Numbered from the whole stretch's first letter, positions 51,342 through 63,382 are shown. The stretch: DNA of 63,382 nucleotides, filler included, from Octopus bimaculoides (GCF_001194135.2; 4 parts of 4 records of this genome joined end to end with filler, not necessarily neighbours in it); one strand, 5' to 3'. Made by a program: numbers and translations. The notes: generated from the letters alone by a model not told the origin.

Positions 51342-52277
51342 TTAAAGTCTGGCATTTTCATACTGAGGATTAGTAGCTCCCCATGAATCTCTTTGTGAAT
51401 CATCTAGAAGCGGGGCATAAGCTATTTCATTGTTTTGTGACAATTGATTCTGTGTTTCTTCAGGTGATCCTTCGTCTGCCTGTTGTTCAGCATCGTCCTG
51501 ACCATGTTGATTGCCATCGTTGTCAGCAACAACCCACGTCATTTCTTCCTCGTTGGGTTTTTCTCCAAATTTATTTGCAGAATTGGAATGATCATCGTCG
51601 TCGTCGCCGCCGCCATTGTTAATATGTTCGACGTATGAAAGACCATCCGTCTGGTTATTATCTTCACCATCGTTGTCATCTTGCAACAGATTGTTGTCAT
51701 CAGCAAAACTGACGTTACTTTTCTTGCCTAAATCAGCAAATGTCATGGTTACTGGAGCTTCTGAAGATAGTTGAGACGCCACCTCTGTGTAATCATTGAT
51801 TCCATCCACATCTTCCGGAAAGCTGCTTGGAGTAGGAATACTTTCCAATTGGTCATTTACAACGGTATCAATTGGAGGTTTATCATCTGTAACTGAATCT
51901 CCAACTGCATTGCCGTGAATTGATGGGCCAAAAGTAGTATACAAGTTTTCATTTTCTGTCTTTTCAATAAAGTTGCTTGTATCAGGAGGCGGCACACTGT
52001 CATAGTCTTCTTTTGGCAGCTGGCCGCTCTCTAGTGCATCTGATAAATTTGCGGCGTTGTTATCAACGCCGTTCATCTTGGAAGAAGTCTTCGAAATACT
52101 GTCATACTCTGCTTTGGCAAACGGCTTTGTGTTCGCTGAGTTCGCCTCACTGTAACTTTCATCCTCTTTTCGTTTTCGCCACCAACAATAACCCAAAAGT
52201 ATCACTGCTATCAAAATTATTATAATGAGCAGTAACACTCCGACAGCACCGAAAAACTCGCCAGTTGTGTAGGCTTC
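51342..52277 (-). CDS. Terminal coding exon B: stalk + single TM helix + acidic Tyr-rich cytoplasmic tail (311 aa)
   Basis: Strong acceptor (gttttttttttcctatatttttcAG, AG at 52279-52278), phase 0, then EAYTTGE-FFGAVGVLLLIIIILIAVILLGYCWW-RKRK and an open, non-repetitive frame to TAA (...NPQYENARL*). The part of the supplied ORF upstream of 52277 is intronic microsatellite. Confidence 0.88.
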   Translation of the reverse strand, partial: EAYTTGEFFGAVGVLLLIIIILIAVILLGYCWWRKRKEDESYSEANSANTKPFAKAEYDSISKTSSKMNGVDNNAANLSDALESGQLPKEDYDSVPPPDTSNFIEKTENENLYTTFGPSIHGNAVGDSVTDDKPPIDTVVNDQLESIPTPSSFPEDVDGINDYTEVASQLSSEAPVTMTFADLGKKSNVSFADDNNLLQDDNDGEDNNQTDGLSYVEHINNGGGDDDDDHSNSANKFGEKPNEEEMTWVVADNDGNQHGQDDAEQQADEGSPEETQNQLSQNNEIAYAPLLDDSQRDSWGATNPQYENARL

Positions 52278-52373
52278 CTGAAAAATATAGGAAAAAAAAA
52301 CAAGATAAATAATTAGCAGCGGAGCAGCAGCGGAGCAGCAGCAACAGCAGCAGTATAGTGGTGAAGATAGAAG

Positions 52374-52375
<2 letters not shown>

Positions 52376-52435
<60 letters not shown>

Positions 52436-52436
52436 A

Positions 52437-52528
<92 letters not shown>
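52376..52528. repeat. Compound (TAG)n-(TCG)n-(TAG)n microsatellite ~100-250 nt upstream of the exon B acceptor
   Basis: Direct reading. Confidence 0.95.
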
Positions 52529-52529
<1 letters not shown>

Positions 52530-53283
52530 AGATTTGCGTATTCTTATGTGACTGTACTGCATATTGCATACACACATGTATATGTATGTATGTATGGATC
52601 ATCGAGGTAAAAGTCGTGTGAGTCGTTTTAGACCTCCGATCATTTGCTGGCATAGCTTCTTAGTGGACCTATTGAACATATATAACAAACTACGACAAAA
52701 TAAGTTACCAAAATACGATTATGAAACAAAGGATAGCATGCAGCATGCTAGGTAACGGTGATACATAAGAGTACACTTATATCAAGCAATATGTTCCGTT
52801 TCGTGTGCGACGTGTGGATTATGGGTTAGTCGCGTTTTGTGATATTTTCTATTTTCTTTCTTCACTTCTACTTTCACTTTCAAATGTTGTGCTCAATGAA
52901 TGATTTGTGCAACATAAAACTTAGCTGCATACACACACATATATATGTGTGTGTGTATGTATGTGTATGTATATATACACCCTCTCACAACTAAGTGATA
53001 TGTTGTACACATCATATAATATATACATGTTGCAAATTTGAAGCTGCTGTGATATATATTATTAAAGCTTTTCGGTGCAATTTTTAAACAAAAAGATCTT
53101 AAATTGACACGTAGGATTAGATATAGAGAAAGTGAGTGACGGAGAGAGACCAATATACATCGGTTAGACAGATATACAGACGGCCGGACAGACAGACAAA
53201 CAGTTAGATAGATAGATAGATAGATAGACAGATAGGTAGACAGATAGATAGATAGACAGATAGATAGACAGATAGATAGATAA

Positions 53284-53336
<53 letters not shown>

Positions 53337-53502
53337 CAGGCAGGCAGACAGACAGAGAATGAGACAAGTTAAACAATAGATGTGTGTGGTACGTGAGGAC
53401 GTTAAAGACATGCATTTTCCTACATTTATGATGGTGGTCCACTGACGATTGTAACCGCACTTGAGAAATAGTCAGTGGATTTAGTCGGTGAAATTCTGCC
53501 AT

Positions 53503-53535
<33 letters not shown>

Positions 53536-53862
53536 GTGTTTTGTGCATCGTGCTCGTTTCGTCATTGTTCTGTTTTACTCTCTACCAGTGCTAATAGTTG
53601 GTGAACTTCAGTGAACTTTGGAAGAATTTTGGTGAAGTTTAAGGCGGTGAAAATATATTTGAAAAGAATCATACTCGTTTCATTTCGTCATTTTGCTTCG
53701 GTGGTCTCACACGGGTTCACGTAGTTTCATTTTCAGCCTCGCAATAAATAGCAGAATTATTTTTTTTTTTTTGTTATGCGTAGTGGTTTCTTTAAGAATT
53801 TGCAGATACATTAGCAGAATTTTTGAAATGATATTATACAATTACAAGCAAAATAGTGTGGC

Positions 53863-53905
<43 letters not shown>

Positions 53906-53975
53906 GTATATATATATTTATATTGCATGGATGCTTCAGACTACCCCTGAAGGATTGAGGCAAGCCTATCATTTA

Positions 53976-54008
<33 letters not shown>

Positions 54009-54454
54009 CTTGTATATAATATATAATGTATTATAATATATACTAGATATATGCGTGGATACATACATATATGCACACACATACATATATGTATATATAT
54101 ATATATGCATATATGCATATATATGCATATATGTATATATATATATATGCATAATATTAACGGCTTCATTCTCGTTTCTCGTTGGGTTTTTTTTTTTACT
54201 GGAGTGATTTTTGTTGGGTAGATTTTTTCATCCTTCCGTATTTCATTGTTCCTCTTCTCTGAATTAATATGTACAGATATAGGATCAAAAGGGCATGGAA
54301 TGTCATCAAAGGTATCATATATGATCGGCAGATTCATAGGCCGTAATAATAGTAATAATTACAACCACCTGAAATATTCCATAGATTAATTGTCAGCTTG
54401 ATTACTAAAGTTTTGTTGCAGACAGGATCAATAAGTTACTCGAAAGCTGATAGA

Positions 54455-54837
54455 ATCGCTAGCACATTGGACAACGTGCTTGGTGTCATTTCTACCGTCT
54501 TTACGCCCTGAGTTGAAATTCTGCTGAGGTCGACTTTGTCTTTCATCCTTTCGGAGTCGATGAAGTACGTAACGTTTGAGTACTGGAGTCGATGTAATCG
54601 ACTAGCCCTCTCCCCTAAAATTCCAGGTCTTGAGACTATTGAAGAAGGCTTTATAAAACAGGAGAAGATACATGGGATGGAGGGTCGCTGAAGAGGTCAT
54701 AGGATGTGTGAGGACAGATTACAGACAAATAATACTAGAATGAGAATAATTATAAATCGGAAATGAAGACTAAGTACATAGTATGGGTGGCTAAGTGGCA
54801 AAAATATGACCATCTCCAAATATAACATCATCATGGC

Positions 54838-54881
<44 letters not shown>

Positions 54882-55622
54882 TTATTATTAGGGAGGTGAG
54901 CTGGCAGAATCGTTAGCACGTCAGGCAAAACGCTTAGCAACATTTCGTCCGTCCTTACGTTTTTGAGTTCAAATTCCGCCGAGGTCGACTGCTTAATTAT
55001 CCTTTCGGGGTCGATGAAATAGGTACCTGTTGAACACTGGGGTCGATGTAATCGACTTAGTCACTCCCCACAAATCTCATAGTAAAAAGGATTATTATTA
55101 TTATTAATATCTGGCTAGATTTAGCGGCATCCCTTTGTAAAAAGGATCATTATGAGTATTGCTACATCTTGATGTCCACGAGCAACCATCTTTACTACCC
55201 GTTACTCCGGGCATCCAAAGTAATGTTTTCATATTTTGAAACAAGGCCAACAACTTTAAGAGAAGGGGCAGGGAATTCGATTACATCGGACCCTTGTCCT
55301 TGACTGGGCCTTTATTTTATTGGCCCTGAAATATGAATGGTAATGTCGATTTTGGCGGAATTTGAACTCAGAACGTAAAGAGTTGGAAGAAAAGCCACTA
55401 ATCAGTTTTGCCAGATTCGTTAACGATTCCACTCGCTCGCCGCCTTCCTGAAATCACTAATAATAATGTGCCATTGAAGTCTTATGATCGATTTAATCGA
55501 CTAACATCCCACAACAACTGTCTGGCGTGGTATTTTTTTTTTTTAAGATAGTGTTATTATCAAAATCTGGTTAATCTCAGAATCTGTAGATGAGTGGATA
55601 AGCTATCGTATGCACTGATTTT

Positions 55623-55654
<32 letters not shown>

Positions 55655-56466
55655 TTCCGAGTTCAAATTCTGTTGTGGTTTTACTTTACTTTCAATCTTT
55701 CCGATGCCAGTAAAACAGAAGTGGTGGGAGTAAATATTTGATAAATCACGTTTAACCGACTCTACAGTCAAGAAATATAACGCTGCCTTTAGTACAAACT
55801 GCATTAATTTTATAAACGTATGACATTTTTGTATAGTGATCTGTTGATTCTTTTGCCTCCCAACCTAATAATTCTTTTCTGAAAATTCAATAGAAAGTCA
55901 AAAATTTTAGGGGAAAGGTAAGTTGATTACATCGACCAAAGTACTTGACTGGTAATTTATTTTATTGGCTCCGAAAGGATGAAAGGTAAAGTCGACCTCG
56001 GTGGAATTTGAACTCAAAAGGTAAAGACAGAGAAAATACGCTCCTAATCTTGTCCAGCGCATTAAGGATTCTGGTCGCTCTTCGCCTTCTTCATGATGGT
56101 TTCAAATTTTGGCACAGAGCCAACAATTTCAGAGGAGGATGAAGTTGATTACATTGATTACATTGCTCAACTGGTACGTATTTTATCGACCTTGAAAGGA
56201 TGAAAGGGAAAGTCGACCTCGGCAACAAAATACCTATTTCGTTATTGCCCACAAGGGGCTAAACATAGAGGGAACAAACAAGAACAGACGAACGGATTAA
56301 GTCGATTACATCGACCCCAGTGCGTAACTGGTACTTAATTTATCGACCCCGAAAGGATGAAAGGCAAAGTCGACCTCGGCGGAATTTGAACTCAGAACGT
56401 AACGGCAGACGAAATACCGCTAAGCATTTCGCCCGGCGTACTAACGCTTCTGCCAGCTCATCACCT
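54455..56466. mobile_element. Cluster of about seven SINE family A copies in both orientations between exons A and B
   Basis: + copies at ~54455-54640, ~54891-55090 and ~55630-55740. Minus copies at ~55240-55446, ~55880-56080, ~56105-56225 and 56228-56466. Confidence 0.8.
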
Positions 56467-56942
56467 TATAATGCTTTCTGATAACACATTTTACTATTGT
56501 ATGAAACTTTGATGCCAGCAGATGAGGAAGATTCGAGATTCACAAATTCCGCTGATTCTTCTTCTCCATATGAGAGGGCAATGGCAAGCTTGTTTTAACG
56601 CCGGATATGAGAAAGCAGCAGGAGTGACCAAACTGTCCATGCACAACTATCAGCCAAGCGCAACAGGAATATCCAGTCTTTCCGTACGAGATAAATATAT
56701 AACTATGATCTGTTAATGATTTCGATTACTCTGACAGACTACAAGACAGGCATGGCTGTGTGATGAAGAAGTTCGCTTCGAAACTACTTGGTTCTAAGTT
56801 CAATCTTAGAGTGCAGTACCTTGTGTATATGTCATCTACCATAGTTCCAAGTCGAGCAAAGTCGTGAGATCGAAATTCAGTGGAAGGAAACCATGTGGAT
56901 TCCTGCTGGAGAGAACGTCTGATTCATCGCCCAGTTTAACAC

Positions 56943-57016
56943 CATCTTCTGATCCATAGATGGGACATCTTCTGATCCATAGATGGGACATCTTCTAATC
57001 CATAGCAGGGACATCT
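56943..57016. repeat. 23-bp tandem repeat x3 (CATCTTCTGATCCATAGATGGGA)
   Basis: Two exact units and one variant. Confidence 0.9.
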
Positions 57017-57419
57017 ATGGAGTTGACTGTGTAGCAAACGCTTGGGCCAAATTGCCACTCTGAGTATAATTTTCTCTCTGTTCCTTTACTCAATAATAGA
57101 AGCCTTGTGAAAGGTTATGTATTTTATCTGTCCTCTGATTAATTCCTTTCAAATAAATCGTTAGTGTGGGTTTAAATCAATTGATGGTAATCGATGAAAT
57201 TCATTGCATCTTAATATTGTTGTTGTCATTGTTGCTTAGCCCCAGTCAACTATGATCGAACAAACTATTGATCAAAAGTGTTCCAGCCACGACTATCAGC
57301 ATAGAAGGAAAGTGTTAACCCCTTTTATTCTACGGTTCAATAAAGTATCGCGCAGTTCGATAAATGATCAGTTCTCACTCCAAATTTCCGTTAAAATAAA
57401 AGTAAAACACTTCTTACAT

Positions 57420-57425
57420 TTTATT
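57420..57425 (-). terminator. Candidate AATAAA polyadenylation signal for exon A (second AATAAA at 57324-57329)
   Basis: TTTATT on + strand, 54 nt and 150 nt downstream of the exon A stop. AATAAA is common in AT-rich DNA, so this is supportive only. Confidence 0.4.
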
Positions 57426-57478
57426 GAAATATCGCTCAAGTTGAAATATGTCCGACTTGCTTCGTTCATAACAAACGT

Positions 57479-59437
57479 TCAGTATACACTGCTGACCTTT
57501 AGACTAACGTTCTTCTTTGCTGTCTTCTCGTCCCCTTGTATGTCATTGGTAGAATCTGACTGACGATTCTGCACATAGCTGTCTGGGAAGCTTCTTACAA
57601 CTGCATCCGTTTGCTGAACCTGGTAACTATAGTTCAAGTCGTTTAGAACTGGCAGGAACGTGAATGGCATATGCCCCACATTCACATAGTAAGAGGTAGA
57701 TTTAGGGCGTGAATCTTCATTTAAACGACTAGAAAGGAGAAAATTATCGTCAATGCTGGTATGCTGTTCTTCATGGTGTTGTTGGTAATATTGCTGCTGC
57801 TGCTGCTGCAGCTTATGATGCTGATGAGGGAGGAAATTATGTTGTAGACGCAGCTGCTTCTGATGTTGGTTGTAGCTGTGATGGTGATGACGGTGATTAT
57901 GAGGTCTGTGGTGTCTATTATGATCATGTTGATGATAGCAGCGATGAGGAACCTCGTTACTTCTATCACCTTGTAACTTATCATCACCACTGTCACCACC
58001 ATTGCCACCATCACCATCATCATCATCATCATTATCATCACCTCCAACACTACAATTCTCATGATCATCATCATCTTTTTCATAAATTGCATCGTCTTCG
58101 TCTGATCGGTAGAATGATGAGGTCCCTTGAATAAATAAATTATTGATCTCCTGTTTTTCATGAGATTCATCGAGAAACAAAGGTGCACAAACTGATTCAC
58201 TCGAAGAAAATGTCAACGAGTCGTTATCGTCAGCAAATATAGAATCGAGGAGGTTCAAAGAGTCGTTCGTTTCACAATCAGTATTGACTGAACGAGGAAG
58301 TGTCGAAGAGTTCTCCATGGTGAATTCTTCTGAGATACATCGATTCGTATTAGTGTCGTGATTAAAAGAACTGCAATCTTCATACTTCAACAGTTCCACC
58401 GAACTCTCAAGAAAGGGTTTCCTTTTACAGGAACCCTCGACTATTTCCTTCGTATCGTTGAGTATTGAAACTGTTCCCTCTCCATCTTCGTTTACTGTAT
58501 GCTTTCTGGAGCTAACTTTTAATGGCTGTTTCGATATGTGCATCTTTTCCATGCTATTTGTTTCTGATAAATGTATTTCGCTTTGGGAAAGTTCGCCTTG
58601 ATCTTCAGGACGAGACAAACTTGTTTGAGGTACTTGTTCTTTTCGACGATGGTCCGAAGATATCAGTCCATGTGGCCCATCACTTCCACCTGGCTCTCTT
58701 TCAAGCTGATGTCTTTGTAATTTTTTATGATTCCGACATTGTATCGTGCTCTCCGCACAAAGAATTTTCTGCGGAGCTGCTGATGTTCTTGCTTTTGCTG
58801 TTGCTGACTCTGTTGCTATTGTTATTAATGTCACTGTTGTTGTTGCTGCCATTGCCGCTGTCGTAACTGCCGGTGGTGGGGACGTGGGTATAGATGATAA
58901 TACAGTTAATGCTGGAGATGATATCGAAGATATTGGGAGCAACGGTGCTTGTGATAACACACACACTGGTAGCAGCAGAAGCTGTGGTGGTGACAAGGCT
59001 GGTGAAAGTGTTGATGGTAGTGGCGGCGGCGACGGTAGTGGTGGTGGTGGTGGCGGTGGTGGTGGTGGCGGTTGTGGTCGTAGCCGTTCACTCTTTGCCG
59101 GTGCCGTTGGTGTTACTGATAATTNNNNNNNNNNNNNNNNNNNNNNNNNNNNNNNNNNNNNNNNNNNNNNNNNNNNNNNNNNNNNNNNNNNNNNNNNNNN
59201 NNNNNNNNNNNNNNNNNNNNNNNNNNNNNNNNNNNNNNNNNNNNNNNNNNNNNNNNNNNNNNNNNNNNNNNNNNNNNNNNNNNNNNNNNNNNNNNNNNNN
59301 NNNNNNNNNNNNNNNNNNNGTGGTGGTGGGGAAGAGGTTAACCTTAGTGGCCGCTGTTCTGTCCATGGTAGTGATGAAAACGCTGATGAAGTCGAAACAG
59401 TAGCTTCTTCAGGCAAAGTAGTAGTAGCAGCAGCAGC

Positions 59438-59489
<52 letters not shown>

Positions 59490-61684
59490 ATAGTAGTAGT
59501 AGTAGTAGCGGCGTTGGCAGTGGGAGTGGTGGAGGCAGTGACACCGGTAGAATTCTGAGATGACGAAATCGTTGTTTCCCGGAGTGATTCGGTGTGGTCC
59601 TTTTTATCTCTGAATTTCTTGAGGTGTCTAGTATCGAAACTGGGTGTCTGGTAAAGAGCCAGAGAGGAATCCCCTGTTAGTCGCAATGATTTCTGCCTTT
59701 CGAAATTATTTGAAGAAATACGTTTATCCATTTTGTTTCTTTCGGTGGAAATATCAGTGAAATTGCTGGTTATTCCCAGAACGTCTTCAACATCCAGCGT
59801 AGAAGACAAGTTCTCTAAAGTTTCGCTTGTTTGCTGTTTCTGAAGTATTTTCAATTGTCTTTGTTGTTCTGCATATTTTAGTATTAACTCTAGCTTTGCT
59901 CTCGCAATTAAATCAGCTTCAAGGCAGGAGCTTCTCAAAAACGGTTCTAAATAACCATCATCACATCTAGTACTGTAAGACTTTGAAGCGTAAACGTTGT
60001 CAGATTCAGGGACGTTATCCCAACTTGTTTTCGAAGTGTTTGTCGACTCTGCAAGGGATTTTGCTTGCGATTTCCTAGCGTTTGACGATCGTGACATATT
60101 TATATAATGCGGATCCGTATGGTAACCCAAATTATCCGGACCTAAAGTTGGCTTATATTTTTTCGATTTCCTCTTCTCTTCATTTTTGAGGATATCATTA
60201 CTCTTTTTATTATACTTACTGCTTTTGCTTGTGTTTTTGTGTCTGTTGTTGTTGTTATTGTCATCACCGTCAACATTATCGTTTTCTTTGGTGGTTATCG
60301 TTGCTGGTTGACATGGAATACCATATGAGGTCTGTACAGTTGGCGGTATTTTTGGCGGCCATGTATCTTCGTAAGACGACGACAATGTTGTTGAAGAATG
60401 ATCTACGTCAACGGCTAAAGGTAGCAGTGTTTCATCAGAGTTTCTGTTACTACAGTATCGTGTTCGATCGAGTGACATTGAAATTCGTTTCGACAAAATT
60501 TCTTCTTTCGTCGCTAGAAGAGAACTTTTATCATAGACATTGAGAGATTGATTCAGGCAGTCGTCTCGTTTCTGAAAAGACGGAGAACTTATTCTTTTAA
60601 TATTTTGTTCCATAATCCATGTTCTTGGAGGAACAGAAGGTGGTCTCTCTTTAATACCAGAACAGTCATCTGATGTCACTTTGCACTTGGCTGGTAATCG
60701 GGACACAGTACTTGCATTCCCTTGCTCTGTCTTTGGTAACTCAGCTCTCTCAATGCCGGTGAGTTTCCTAATTGTGTTTCCGGGAGAATATCTTTTTAAT
60801 CTATGGTTCAACCTTGAAGCAGAACTCTGTTTAACTATCTCAGGTGAACGTCTAAATGACCTCCTTCCTTCGCTTCTCTTCAAAGATTTTCTATCACTGA
60901 ACATAACTTCGTTATTGCTGTTACTTCTATTATTACAGTTGTTGCTGTATTTACTTTTTCTGTTGATTTCCTTATTAAATCTTGCTTTTCTTCTGCGTTG
61001 TTTGTCTGATTCCAATGGGGTTTTGACGGCCATTGATGGTAAACATAAAGTTTCGGTGTCAATGTTATTAGAAGCTCGATCTGATGTGAGTTGTTGACGT
61101 AATTCTTGCAACTCTGATTTTCCGTACCGGTTTCTTGTGGGCGGATGTTCGATTTCAACTATTACTTCGTTACTTTGAATAACACTGTTGTTCTTAGCAG
61201 GCCTTTCGTCTAATTTCTGCAATGGGGGTCTTTTTGGAACTTCCAAATGTACAGGGGTCAATGAACGAGTAAGTCGAGGTGGAGCACCAAAAGTGTCACT
61301 TTCCTTTATATTCAAGGCTGGTCTTTTTGATTCGTTTTTAGAGGTGATCGATTTAATCACAAGTGAACCGTTCTGGTCCTTACCTAAAGAAACTGACAGC
61401 TTCCCAGCCCCATGTCGGCGCAACGGCGCTAAAGACGCAGCTTGCTGATTTTTGTTCTTAGTATTGTCTGGAAGAATGTCAGTCGAATTGTTTTTAGCTA
61501 TATTCGATAGGCCATTGAAAGATTGTTGAAAAGGGAAGATGGGCATTAGTTTTCTAGCACGTATGCACAGCACTAACAAACAAATAACAACTACAAGAAG
61601 AACAAGACCCATAATGGTTAAAATATAGAAGAAAATAACTACCGATGCTGGAACACCTAGTGGAGTTGTCGACGATGGAATAAG
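57479..61684 (-). CDS. Terminal coding exon A: stalk + single TM helix + ~1350-aa low-complexity cytoplasmic tail (1401 aa including a 195-N gap) of an unidentified single-pass membrane protein
   Basis: Supplied ORF 57479..61612 extends 24 codons upstream (LIPSSTTPLGVPASVVIFFYILTI) to a phase-0 acceptor (ttttctataatttcAG, AG at 61686-61685). Hydrophobic run VVIFFYILTIMGLVLLVVVICLLVLCI is followed by RARK. The frame is open for ~2.36 kb before and ~1.65 kb after the N gap (59125-59319). Frame continuity across the gap assumes the gap size is right. Confidence 0.85.
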
Positions 61685-62287
61685 CTGAAATTATAGAAAA
61701 TAAATAAATAAATATAAACAATTACATTAAAAGCAAAAGTATTTCTTGAATGAAAATAATATACAGTTAATAAGTCACAACAAGTTAATGCTCAAAGTCT
61801 TAAAAATTATAATGACTTTTAACATTAACTTTTGTTATTAAATATTTTTCATTATGCATATCTATACAACAAATCCTTGTGTCCTTATTGTTAGGTGTTG
61901 GTCTCAGAATTCTAGGTCCGTATGTTCGATTCTCTGACCGAGGTGCATCTTGCATCTTTGAGCAAGGAATTGCATTGTTCATCCTCCAAATCTATTCAGC
62001 TAGAAGTGAGCACCTGCAGCAGTTGGAGTTAAATTTGGAAAGGACTGGCTTCCGAATCAAAAGGCAAAAGTAACCAACGACAGACGTTTCATTTTCCACT
62101 ATAAAGATGCCATCATGGTAACCCTTACTACTCATGGACTCGACTCACGCAGTTAACACATGCATACATACACACACACACAGAGAAACATACACACAGA
62201 GAGAGAGAAACATACACACATATATACATACATATATATATATGCATGTATATATACATATATATATGTATGTATATATATATATAT

Positions 62288-62320
<33 letters not shown>

Positions 62321-62321
62321 T

Positions 62322-62382
<61 letters not shown>

Positions 62383-63382
62383 AGAGTTGTACTCAGCGCA
62401 CGACAATTTTACATTTCAGGTTTCGTCTTTTATTGCTAAACGTAATATAAAGACCGCATCAAGAATGATGAAGCGTTCAGGTTGATTATGCGTGCTGCAT
62501 TTATGAGGTGTATCTAAGGATTACATTTGTGTGATATCATGTGTTGCGGAATACTGAAACATATGTAACATGACATAAGGAATACTAAGTTCAAGCTCAT
62601 GGTCTTTTCTCCGATTTTATGTACATATCAGCATCACATTGATGTCATTTAACAAAATCACAACATGGAATTTGTAAAAGCATATTATGAAACAAGTTTA
62701 TCATTTTTCTTAATTGCAATCAAATATCTTACACAAGAAATGTCTTAACATATATATATATATATTCTAGGATAAAACAACAATAGTAGCAACAATAACA
62801 AACAACAATAACAACAATTACAACAATGGGATTCCTCGTAAGGATTGTATGCCATGATTTCATAAACGGAAAATATATCTTTGAGGAGCTAAAAGAAAGT
62901 TTCACATAAGAAAACAACACAAGATTGATCTATCCAACATAATTAAATTCTATATGCATGTATCACTAGAAACGAAAACATGTTTTGATACAGTTTGTCT
63001 GAATTAGGCTTTACTGGCTTTATAGAACTCAAAGGTAAAATGTGATTCTTAGATTTTCTAAATTAGAAACAAAATGAAAAGTGACACATTCAATTATATT
63101 ATCATCATTTATATATACATATATATTACATTATATTATATTAAATATTATATTATATTATATTATATTATATTATATTATATATTTATGAAAATATTTT
63201 CTCAAATTAAGATCGAGTATTATAAAAGGAAATCTTTTGAAATCCTAAACACAGATCTGAGGGAAGGAAACTTTTGTGTAAGGGTTTTCAAATTTTTGTT
63301 GTGACCATATCAAGAAATTCTTGTAAATCTTTATATGTATATATACATACGTACATATATATTATATATGAATATATATATA

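What the first reader, a model, noticed from the sequence alone, without database searches (positions are those of the whole stretch)
51342..61684. Two parallel TM + signalling-tail terminal exons: a possible receptor with swappable intracellular modules
Seen: exons 61684->57479 and 52277->51342 lie in tandem on the minus strand in one contiguous assembly block. Both start at strong phase-0 acceptors. Both encode a short stalk, one TM helix, juxtamembrane Cys (ICLLVLC-IRARK; GYC-WWRKRK), a basic cluster, then an unrelated disordered tail (~1350 vs ~280 aa) and their own stop. AATAAA follows exon A at +54 and +150 nt. Inference: any upstream phase-0 donor could join either exon, so one ectodomain (encoded beyond 63382) could get two entirely different membrane anchors and signalling tails by alternative last-exon choice. 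That is the mirror image of vertebrate clustered protocadherins (variable ectodomain, constant tail) and much larger than the Dscam exon 17 TM swap. The ectodomain is not visible and novelty is unverified.
Basis: partly seen in the sequence, partly recalled or inferred. Interest (0 to 1): 0.8.

Follow-up and report, generated by a model that had tools for sequence, protein, structure and literature searches.

The report
Two tandem membrane-anchor tail exons, octopus
Two real coding exons of one already-annotated, uncharacterised Octopus bimaculoides gene each encode a membrane helix plus a disordered tail, and most likely give two alternative 3' ends, which is an ordinary mechanism that cannot be proven without RNA data.

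Summary
On the minus strand, exon A (61684-57479) and exon B (52277-51342) each start right after an AG. Each encodes one hydrophobic helix, a basic cluster, a low-confidence (disordered) tail and its own stop. AATAAA lies +54 and +150 nt after A's stop. The N gap (59125-59319) sits in a (CCA)n tract that reads Pro on both flanks, and only one frame stays open after it, so A is probably one continuous exon.

The locus is already public as UniProt A0A0L8HCL0 (Octopus bimaculoides, uncharacterised, 1681 aa). That model joins A to B in series through the AAG|GTCAGC donor. It also contains two artefactual introns around the gap, so the join is not independent evidence.

B is conserved in another octopod (57-61% aa identity, dN/dS 0.37, conserved acceptor and 3'UTR). 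A has no detectable relative anywhere.

No separate first coding exon for B lies between A and B. The donor at 57496 is the only decent phase-0 donor in A. Both anchors have N-out/C-in flanks.

Best reading: one transcription unit with a proximal (A) and a distal (B) 3' end. A shared ectodomain is not shown. Precedents exist (CRB1-A/B). Low to moderate interest.

The parts
61685..61722 (-). T-rich tract and AG acceptor of exon A (tttcag|CTT)
   Evidence: Read directly. 74% pyrimidines in -21..-4 and C at -3. The public model A0A0L8HCL0 uses this acceptor: aa 76 starts at 61684.
57497..61684 (-). Exon A coding body, from the acceptor to the candidate donor. It encodes a 14-aa stalk, a hydrophobic helix, the IRARK cluster and a tail of about 1350 aa. 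Length is nominal because of the gap.
   Evidence: Stop-free 61690-57482. P about 1e-18 and 1e-12 for the two halves. 100% identical to P0002 aa 76-857 and 899-1370. No Pfam domain.
61562..61642 (-). Hydrophobic segment of A (VVIFFYILTIMGLVLLVVVICLLVLCI). It is either a membrane anchor or, if translation starts at ATG 61612, a signal peptide or signal-anchor.
   Evidence: KD19 up to 3.39. AF2 helix 13-49 with pLDDT 86-96. ATG 61612-61610 sits in the context ACCATTATGG, with A at -3 and G at +4.
59125..59319 (.). Assembly gap (195 N) inside exon A, within a (CCA)n / (ACT)n(GCT)n low-complexity tract
   Evidence: (CCA)n reads Pro on both flanks in the long frame. The other two frames stop 3 and 11 codons after the gap.
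57488..57499 (-). Candidate 5' splice site AAG|GTCAGC. The exon would end at 57497 and the GT is at 57496-57495. It is phase 0 and lies 5 codons before the stop.
   Evidence: PWM 2.84. It is the only phase-0 site >=2.8 among 181 GT sites in A. The public model uses it to join B.
57479..57481 (-). Stop codon TGA of exon A (…KVSSVY*)
57324..57425 (-). Two AATAAA poly(A) signals, 54 and 150 nt after A's stop (57425-57420 and 57329-57324)
   Evidence: Background is one per 1036 nt on this strand. Poisson P(>=2 in 150 nt) is about 0.01.
52278..57478 (-). A-B interval (an intron or intergenic DNA). It holds SINE-like repeats and microsatellites and no credible coding first exon.
   Evidence: Repeat families D6-D9. 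Only 6 donor-like sites, none preceded by an ATG plus a hydrophobic signal. No ORF >=80 aa other than low-complexity ones.
52278..52305 (-). Polypyrimidine tract and AG acceptor of exon B (ttttcag|GAA)
   Evidence: 89% pyrimidines; one of 2 of 781 AG sites in the piece that pass the stringent filter. The acceptor and its phase are conserved in L001, where it reads ttttccag|GAAGCC.
51342..52277 (-). Exon B. It encodes a 7-aa acidic stalk, a helix, the WWRKRK cluster, a 274-aa acidic tail (net charge -44) and the stop.
   Evidence: The ortholog is P0001/L001: 57% identity by BLASTP and 61% in the MAFFT alignment, all indels are multiples of 3, and dN/dS is 0.37. AF2 gives helix 5-48 and pLDDT<50 elsewhere.
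52179..52256 (-). Transmembrane segment of B (FFGAVGVLLLIIIILIAVILLGYCWW)
   Evidence: KD19 up to 3.43. AF2 pLDDT 96-97. The first third of the exon has the lowest dN/dS, 0.17.
51040..51341 (-). Conserved 3'UTR of exon B
   Evidence: 82% identity to L001, against 73% for the coding part, 56% at synonymous sites and 48% in the upstream intron. The first AATAAA is only at +743.

Best explanation
A and B are the last two coding exons of one Octopus bimaculoides transcription unit, already deposited as the uncharacterised protein A0A0L8HCL0. The unit has two alternative 3' ends.

Proximal end: cleavage at the AATAAA pair just after A's stop gives an mRNA whose protein ends in anchor A plus the ~1350-aa basic/mixed-charge tail.

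Distal end: if that site is bypassed, splicing continues to B. B is the older, conserved terminal exon. It encodes a type-I anchor and a 274-aa acidic tail with conserved Tyr motifs (ENENLYT, I-x-Y-A-P-L) and a constrained 3'UTR.

I think B is mostly joined to the exon upstream of A, with A skipped. Both acceptors are phase 0, and two N-out/C-in anchors do not fit in one chain. The donor 5 codons before A's stop could also make A a composite exon that is sometimes spliced to B.

Shown here: both exons are coding, B is under purifying selection, and the signals are present at the stated positions. Inferred: use of the poly(A) sites, which donor feeds B, the membrane topology, and any signalling role.
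For: - Coding reality: ORF statistics. For B, frame-preserving indels and dN/dS 0.37.
- Same locus: the public model contains both exons. No candidate first coding exon for B lies in the 5.2-kb interval. B has no Met before its TM, so it needs an upstream coding exon.
- Proximal 3' end: A has its own stop plus two AATAAA within 150 nt, against one per 1036 nt in the background.
- Distal 3' end: B has the strongest acceptor in the piece. Its acceptor and 3'UTR are conserved.
- Against a series reading as the main product: the N-flanks are uncharged or acidic and the C-flanks are +3/+4 for both helices. B's tail has no Cys beyond the juxtamembrane one, and its N-glycosylation sequons are not conserved.
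- A-like ORFs were not found in a library that does hold the B ortholog.
- Proximal/distal terminal-exon choice is a common, documented mechanism (PMC5928244).
Against: - No RNA evidence of any kind.
- The exon upstream of A lies outside the piece.
- The AAG|GTCAGC donor placement (about 0.6-3% by chance) and the public model both point to A->B splicing. If that were the only route to B, there would be no swap of tails.
- A's acceptor is only moderate. An ATG in good Kozak context (61612) allows A to be an independent intronless gene.
- The public N-terminus (75 aa, 12 K/R, no hydrophobic stretch) gives no signal peptide, which a type-I reading of both anchors needs.
- The donor PWM was built from human frequencies recalled from memory.
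Confidence: 0.42

Rival explanations
1. Nested or independent gene. A is a separate, essentially intronless gene that starts at ATG 61612 (MGLVLLVVVICLLVLCIRARK…). Its N-terminal hydrophobic segment followed by a basic cluster acts as an N-out signal-anchor, its large disordered region is cytosolic, and it ends at its own poly(A) signals. It lies on the same strand inside the last intron of the gene that owns exon B. The AG at 61685 and the GT at 57496 are chance matches.
For: - ATG 61612 has A at -3 and G at +4.
- The frame opens only 2 codons upstream of the AG, and the in-frame stretch before the ATG is T-rich DNA.
- A has its own stop and two AATAAA.
- A is unrelated to B and has no detectable homolog, whereas B is conserved. 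This fits a lineage-restricted insertion into an older gene.
- A's acceptor is only moderate.
Against: - The public model splices an upstream exon onto 61684, though possibly ab initio.
- The donor 5 codons before the stop would be a 0.6-3% coincidence.
- No parent gene or paralog of A was found, although proteins of the window's own genome appear to be hidden from the word-index search.
- No promoter evidence.
Confidence: 0.25
2. Series model with a different topology. The hydrophobic segment at the start of A is a signal peptide or signal-anchor. The ~1350-aa A region is then extracellular (S/T/P-rich, 21 N-x-S/T sequons), and B supplies the only stop-transfer anchor and the cytoplasmic tail. 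Splicing 57497->52277 gives the membrane form. Reading through the unused donor for 5 codons to the stop, with polyadenylation at AATAAA, gives a secreted or untethered form. That is the IgM mu-s/mu-m type of switch. In the obligatory variant, only the A->B mRNA exists, as in A0A0L8HCL0.
For: - The only decent phase-0 donor in A lies 15 nt before the stop.
- B's acceptor is phase 0 and strong.
- The public model joins the exons this way.
- Poly(A) signals lie just after the short read-through, the layout of a composite terminal exon (PMC5928244).
- MGLVLLVVVICLLVLC-IRA|RK fits the -3/-1 rule (inference).
- This reading removes the topological conflict.
Against: - The A region looks cytoplasmic rather than extracellular. 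It has 32 dibasic pairs, a KRIS motif three times (0 of 2000 shuffles), a poly-Pro run, a His/Gln-rich tract, a 50-residue helix, and only 28% S+T+P.
- Sequons number 21 against 16 expected, so they are not enriched.
- In the public model the hydrophobic segment sits at aa 90-116, which is not N-terminal.
- A main-body exon that is undetectable in a species retaining B at 57-61% identity is odd.
- The same model contains two artefactual introns.
Confidence: 0.22
3. Two unrelated neighbouring genes with entirely separate upstream exons and promoters, with B's upstream exons interleaved with or upstream of A's. Alternatively, A is a recently decayed or non-functional ORF.
For: Tandem same-strand genes are common. 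A and B share no sequence similarity. A has no homologs.
Against: A 4.2-kb open frame cannot persist without selection. No first exon for B lies in the interval. Interleaved exon sets are rarer than alternative 3' ends.
Confidence: 0.1

Closest known systems
Alternative last exons by intronic polyadenylation ('skipped' and 'composite' terminal exons; IgM mu-s/mu-m is the textbook case; PMC5928244)
   Same: A proximal exon with its own stop and AAUAAA lies in the intron before a distal terminal exon. A 5' splice site sits just upstream of the proximal stop, which is the composite layout. The choice would change the membrane-anchoring and C-terminal part of the protein.
   Different: The proximal exon here is huge (about 4.2 kb of coding sequence). 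It carries its own hydrophobic anchor rather than removing one. Usage of either 3' end is not shown.
CRB1-A versus CRB1-B (mouse and human retina; PMC7335077)
   Same: The two isoforms share ectodomain sequence but use different 3' exons that encode different transmembrane and intracellular domains.
   Different: CRB1 isoforms also use different promoters and signal peptides, and they were proven by long-read RNA and antibodies. Here no ectodomain is visible, no RNA data exist, and there is no homology to Crumbs.
Dscam1 exon 17.1/17.2 and PCDH15 CD1/CD2/CD3 isoforms (from my own knowledge, not tested here)
   Same: Alternative exons swap the transmembrane segment (Dscam1) or the cytoplasmic domain (PCDH15) on a common ectodomain.
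   Different: Dscam1 exons 17.1 and 17.2 are short, mutually exclusive internal exons that are homologous to each other. The PCDH15 CD isoforms share one TM. A and B are unrelated terminal exons, and no Ig or cadherin domain was found.
Vertebrate clustered protocadherins
   Same: Only the general idea of modular exon choice in a cell-surface gene.
   Different: Those have arrays of many homologous variable first exons, each with its own promoter, spliced to constant exons. Here there are two non-homologous 3' exons and no cadherin signature. This locus is not a member of that family.
UniProt A0A0L8HCL0_OCTBM (the deposited model of this very locus)
   Same: 100% identity to exon A (aa 76-857 and 899-1370) and to exon B (aa 1371-1681).
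   Different: The model joins A to B in series. It hops the gap with a 250-nt intron, 43 aa in another frame, and a 53-nt intron. It adds 75 N-terminal aa encoded outside the piece.

Membership tests
   AG at 61685 with 74% pyrimidines upstream in AT-rich DNA. The public model uses it. No RNA evidence.
   TGA at 57481-57479. AATAAA at +54 and +150, against a background of one per 1036 nt.
   Exon B: strong conserved acceptor, stop at 51344-51342, and a 3'UTR 82% identical to the ortholog.
   The upstream exon lies beyond 63382. No transcript data are reachable. The protein searches returned only a genomic ORF (P0001) and the deposited model (P0002).
Composite terminal exon (IgM-type switch) | A 5' splice site followed closely by an in-frame stop and an intronic poly(A) signal | tested here: met
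   AAG|GTCAGC at 57496 (PWM 2.84, the only phase-0 site >=2.8 in A), a stop 5 codons later, and AATAAA 54 nt after that. These are sequence signals only.
Composite terminal exon (IgM-type switch) | Both spliced and read-through mRNAs exist | not testable with these tools
   No RNA data.
Type-I single-pass membrane receptor | One hydrophobic helix with positive charges on the C-terminal (inside) flank | tested here: met
   A: V15-I41 followed by RARK. B: F8-W33 followed by RKRK, and the ortholog has KRKK.
Type-I single-pass membrane receptor | An N-terminal signal peptide and a folded ectodomain upstream | tested here: not met
   Within the piece, no exon lies upstream of A. The only public N-terminus is 75 aa, has 12 K/R, and has no hydrophobic stretch or domain. 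The true 5' end may be missing from that model.
Clustered protocadherin-like variable/constant organisation | Cadherin repeats and an array of homologous alternative exons | tested here: not met
   No Pfam cadherin or protocadherin hit in A, B or P0001. A and B are not homologous. Only two exons are present.
Membrane mucin-like protein (series reading) | A long extracellular S/T/P-dominated region between the signal sequence and the TM | tested here: inconclusive
   S+T+P is 28%. There are poly-Thr/Ala and poly-Pro runs, but also 12% K+R, 32 dibasic pairs and three KRIS motifs.

The most novel reading that the evidence does not exclude
One octopus membrane-protein gene gained, in the O. bimaculoides lineage, a giant (about 4.2 kb) lineage-restricted terminal exon. 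That exon replaces both the transmembrane anchor and the whole cytoplasmic tail of the ancestral protein by proximal poly(A) choice. The same N-terminal or extracellular part would then be wired to two unrelated intracellular modules: a ~1350-aa basic/mixed-charge tail with three KRIS motifs, a poly-Pro run and a coiled-coil-like helix, or a 274-aa acidic tail with Tyr motifs.
Probability: 0.25. Interest if true: 0.45.

Novelty: new member of a known kind. Interest (0 to 1): 0.25.

Why it matters
If RNA data confirmed the two 3' ends, this would be a clear invertebrate case of anchor-plus-tail swapping. One of the two tails would be evolutionarily young. That would be useful for studying how cephalopod cell-surface proteins diversify beyond the known protocadherin expansion.

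As it stands, the value is practical. The deposited model A0A0L8HCL0 is probably wrong around the assembly gap, and its A-to-B join needs transcript support. The mechanism itself, alternative terminal exons and intronic polyadenylation, is ordinary and has vertebrate precedents.

Tried and rejected
- Homology for A. I ran a word-index search of aa 1-718 and of 326 C-terminal aa. I also ran full HMMER of aa 1-721 against 1.84 billion representatives and a metagenome scan. Nothing came back but the deposited model itself.
- Homology for B. One Logan genomic ORF was found (P0001), carried on 3 contigs of about 1.4 kb, two of which were shown (L001 and L002). They hold no upstream sequence. A metagenome scan found nothing.
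- The word-index search never returned P0002, although P0002 is in the collection. 'No hit' therefore says nothing about O. bimaculoides transcripts.
- The look-up of encoding contigs for P0002 returned nothing on record, so no DNA beyond 63382 could be fetched.
- Pfam gave only sub-threshold hits of the transmembrane-helix type.
- Tandem duplication of A and B is rejected, because they share no similarity.
- A separate small gene for B inside the A-B interval is rejected as unlikely, because no ATG, signal and donor combination exists there.
- Rfam gave only sub-threshold 'miRNA' matches on TA/CA microsatellites. No tRNAs were found.
- Paper searches for the accession and for the SRA runs found nothing. 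The 2015 octopus genome paper is not held, so I could not confirm how the model was built.

Full report
**What is there.** The piece (47370-63382) is AT-rich animal DNA full of microsatellites and SINE-like repeats. On the minus strand there are two long open frames.

- Exon A starts after ...ctataatttcag| at 61684 and is stop-free to TGA at 57481-57479.
- Exon B starts after ...tatatttttcag| at 52277 and ends at 51344-51342.
- The local background has 5.0% stop trinucleotides. Open runs of 788, 547 and 311 codons therefore have P of about 2e-18, 6e-13 and 1e-7. Both exons are coding.

**Features of each exon.**

- Each begins with a short stalk and one strongly hydrophobic segment. In A this is V15-I41 and in B it is F8-W33, with KD19 up to 3.4 in both.
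- AF2 predicts helices at A 13-49 and B 5-48 with pLDDT of about 86-97.
- Each has a juxtamembrane Cys and a basic cluster (IRARK in A, WWRKRK in B).
- Each then has a tail that AF2 leaves at pLDDT<50. The exception is a 50-residue helix in A at 580-629.
- There is no Pfam domain. The two tails are unrelated to each other.
- AATAAA lies +54 and +150 nt after A's stop. This strand carries one AATAAA per 1036 nt.

**The gap.**

- 59125-59319 (195 N) lies inside A between trinucleotide repeats.
- Before it the frame ends ...TCC CCA CCA CCA C.
- After it, two frames stop within 3 and 11 codons. The third runs 547 codons to A's stop and again reads (CCA/CCG)n as proline.
- One continuous exon is the simplest reading. 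The true length, and whether a small intron hides in the gap, are unknown.

**Identity.**

- A full HMMER search of A aa 1-721 against 1.84 billion representatives found one protein. It is P0002, equal to UniRef100_A0A0L8HCL0, 'Uncharacterized protein', Octopus bimaculoides, 1681 aa.
- I mapped it onto the piece and rebuilt it.
  - Aa 1-75 are encoded outside the piece.
  - The rest is 61684-59343 + 59092-58965 + 58911-57497 + 52277-51345.
- The deposited model therefore joins A to B in series through AAG|GTCAGC at 57496.
- It crosses the gap with a 250-nt GT..AG 'intron' whose donor scores -0.69. It then reads 43 aa in a His-rich alternative frame and returns through a 53-nt 'intron'.
- That is frame juggling by a gene predictor, so the A-to-B join cannot be taken as transcript evidence.
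- Its 75-aa N-terminus has 12 K/R, no hydrophobic stretch and no domain. No ectodomain is documented.

**Conservation.**

- B has one relative, P0001. It is a genomic ORF on ~1.4-kb Logan contigs from runs SRR11869390 and SRR11869384.
- Identity is 57% by BLASTP and 61% in the MAFFT alignment.
- The AG acceptor and its phase are conserved. All six indels are multiples of three.
- dN/dS is 0.37 overall and 0.17 over the stalk-TM third.
- The 300 nt after the stop are 82% identical, against 56% at synonymous sites and 48% in the upstream intron.
- B is thus a constrained terminal exon with a constrained 3'UTR.
- A has no detectable relative in any search, although the same library holds the B ortholog.
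- Caveat: the word-index search hides proteins of the window's own genome. It never returned P0002.

**Which donor feeds B?**

- B has no Met before its TM, so it needs an upstream coding exon.
- In the 5.2-kb A-B interval there are only six donor-like sites (PWM >=2). None is preceded by an ATG and a hydrophobic signal.
- That interval is mostly SINE copies and microsatellites.
- B is therefore fed either from A or from exons upstream of A.
- Among 181 GT sites in A, four reach PWM >=2.8 and only one is in phase 0. That one is 57496, five codons before the stop. The chance of such placement is roughly 0.6-3%.
- The PWM uses human donor frequencies that I recalled from memory.
- This points to real A-to-B splicing and gives the layout of a composite terminal exon: donor, short read-through to a stop, then AAUAAA (PMC5928244).

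**Arguments against the series protein as the main product.**

- Both helices have uncharged or acidic N-flanks and +3/+4 C-flanks. Both therefore look like N-out/C-in anchors, which cannot both hold in one chain.
- B's tail has conserved Tyr motifs (ENENLYT; I-x-Y-A-P-L). It has no Cys beyond the juxtamembrane one, and its sequons are not conserved. This suggests a cytoplasmic tail.
- A's tail also looks cytoplasmic. It has three KRIS motifs (0 of 2000 shuffles), 32 dibasic pairs, and poly-Pro and His/Gln-rich tracts.

**Verdict.** I rank the readings as follows.

1. One transcription unit with a proximal (A) and a distal (B) 3' end, with B reached mainly by skipping A: about 0.42.
2. A as a nested intronless gene starting at ATG 61612 (context ACCATTATGG): about 0.25.
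3. The series/IgM-like reading, in which A's hydrophobic start is a signal sequence and B is the only anchor: about 0.22.
4. Other readings: about 0.1.

Its interpretation cannot be decided here.
- Its novelty is overstated. CRB1-A and CRB1-B already show shared ectodomain sequence with alternative 3' exons that encode different TM and intracellular domains (PMC7335077).
- Alternative terminal exons are widespread (PMC5928244).

Noticed in passing
window 58912-59342: The deposited model A0A0L8HCL0 crosses the N gap with a 250-nt GT..AG 'intron' (59342-59093). It then reads 43 aa in a His-rich alternative frame (59092-58965) and returns through a 53-nt 'intron' (58964-58912). The long frame is open throughout, so these are annotation artefacts.
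   Followed up: yes
window 48006-48092, 49838-50070, 54442-54621, 54999-55075, 55311-55393, 55957-56039, 56137-56467: At least seven copies, in both orientations, of a SINE-like element of about 230 nt (shared core ...TCGACCCCGAAAGGATGAAAGGCAAAGTCGACCTCGGCGGAATTTGAACTCAGAA...). They fill much of the A-B interval and the DNA downstream of B. ARAGORN finds no tRNA in them.
   Followed up: partly
window 51040-51341 versus L001 1106-1390: The 3'UTR of exon B is more conserved between the two octopods (82%) than the coding part (73%) or synonymous sites (56%). This suggests regulatory constraint. The first AATAAA is only at +743, beyond a (TA)n microsatellite.
   Followed up: partly
L001 60-157: The orthologous contig carries a tandem duplication of about 62 nt covering the polypyrimidine tract, the AG and the first ~27 nt of the exon. 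It therefore has two acceptor copies, and only the second is in frame with the conserved ORF.
   Followed up: no
window 52330-52560: A compound microsatellite (CTA)n(CGA)n(CTA)n(CTG)n lies directly upstream of B's acceptor. It is open in the exon's frame (poly-Leu/Arg), which extends the mechanical ORF to 411 aa. A (TAC)n run sits at the same place in L001.
   Followed up: partly
window 60595-60584, 60487-60476, 59722-59711 (exon A aa 364, 400, 655): The tetrapeptide KRIS occurs three times in tail A (IKRISSPSF, SKRISMSLD, DKRISSNNF). None of 2000 shuffles reaches that count. It may be a basophilic-kinase or docking motif.
   Followed up: partly
window 61606-61624: The first in-frame ATG of exon A (61612) lies inside the hydrophobic segment, in a good Kozak-like context (ACCATTATGG). 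An independent start giving MGLVLLVVVICLLVLCIRARK… is therefore possible.
   Followed up: partly
window 48487-48759: A second assembly gap (273 N), flanked by (TA)n, lies downstream of exon B.
   Followed up: no
window 50813-51038, 54047-54153, 62212-62387: Rfam E-value hits to mir-297, mir-466, mir-3149 and similar families. All are far below gathering score, occur on both strands and sit on TA/CA microsatellites. They are composition artefacts.
   Followed up: yes
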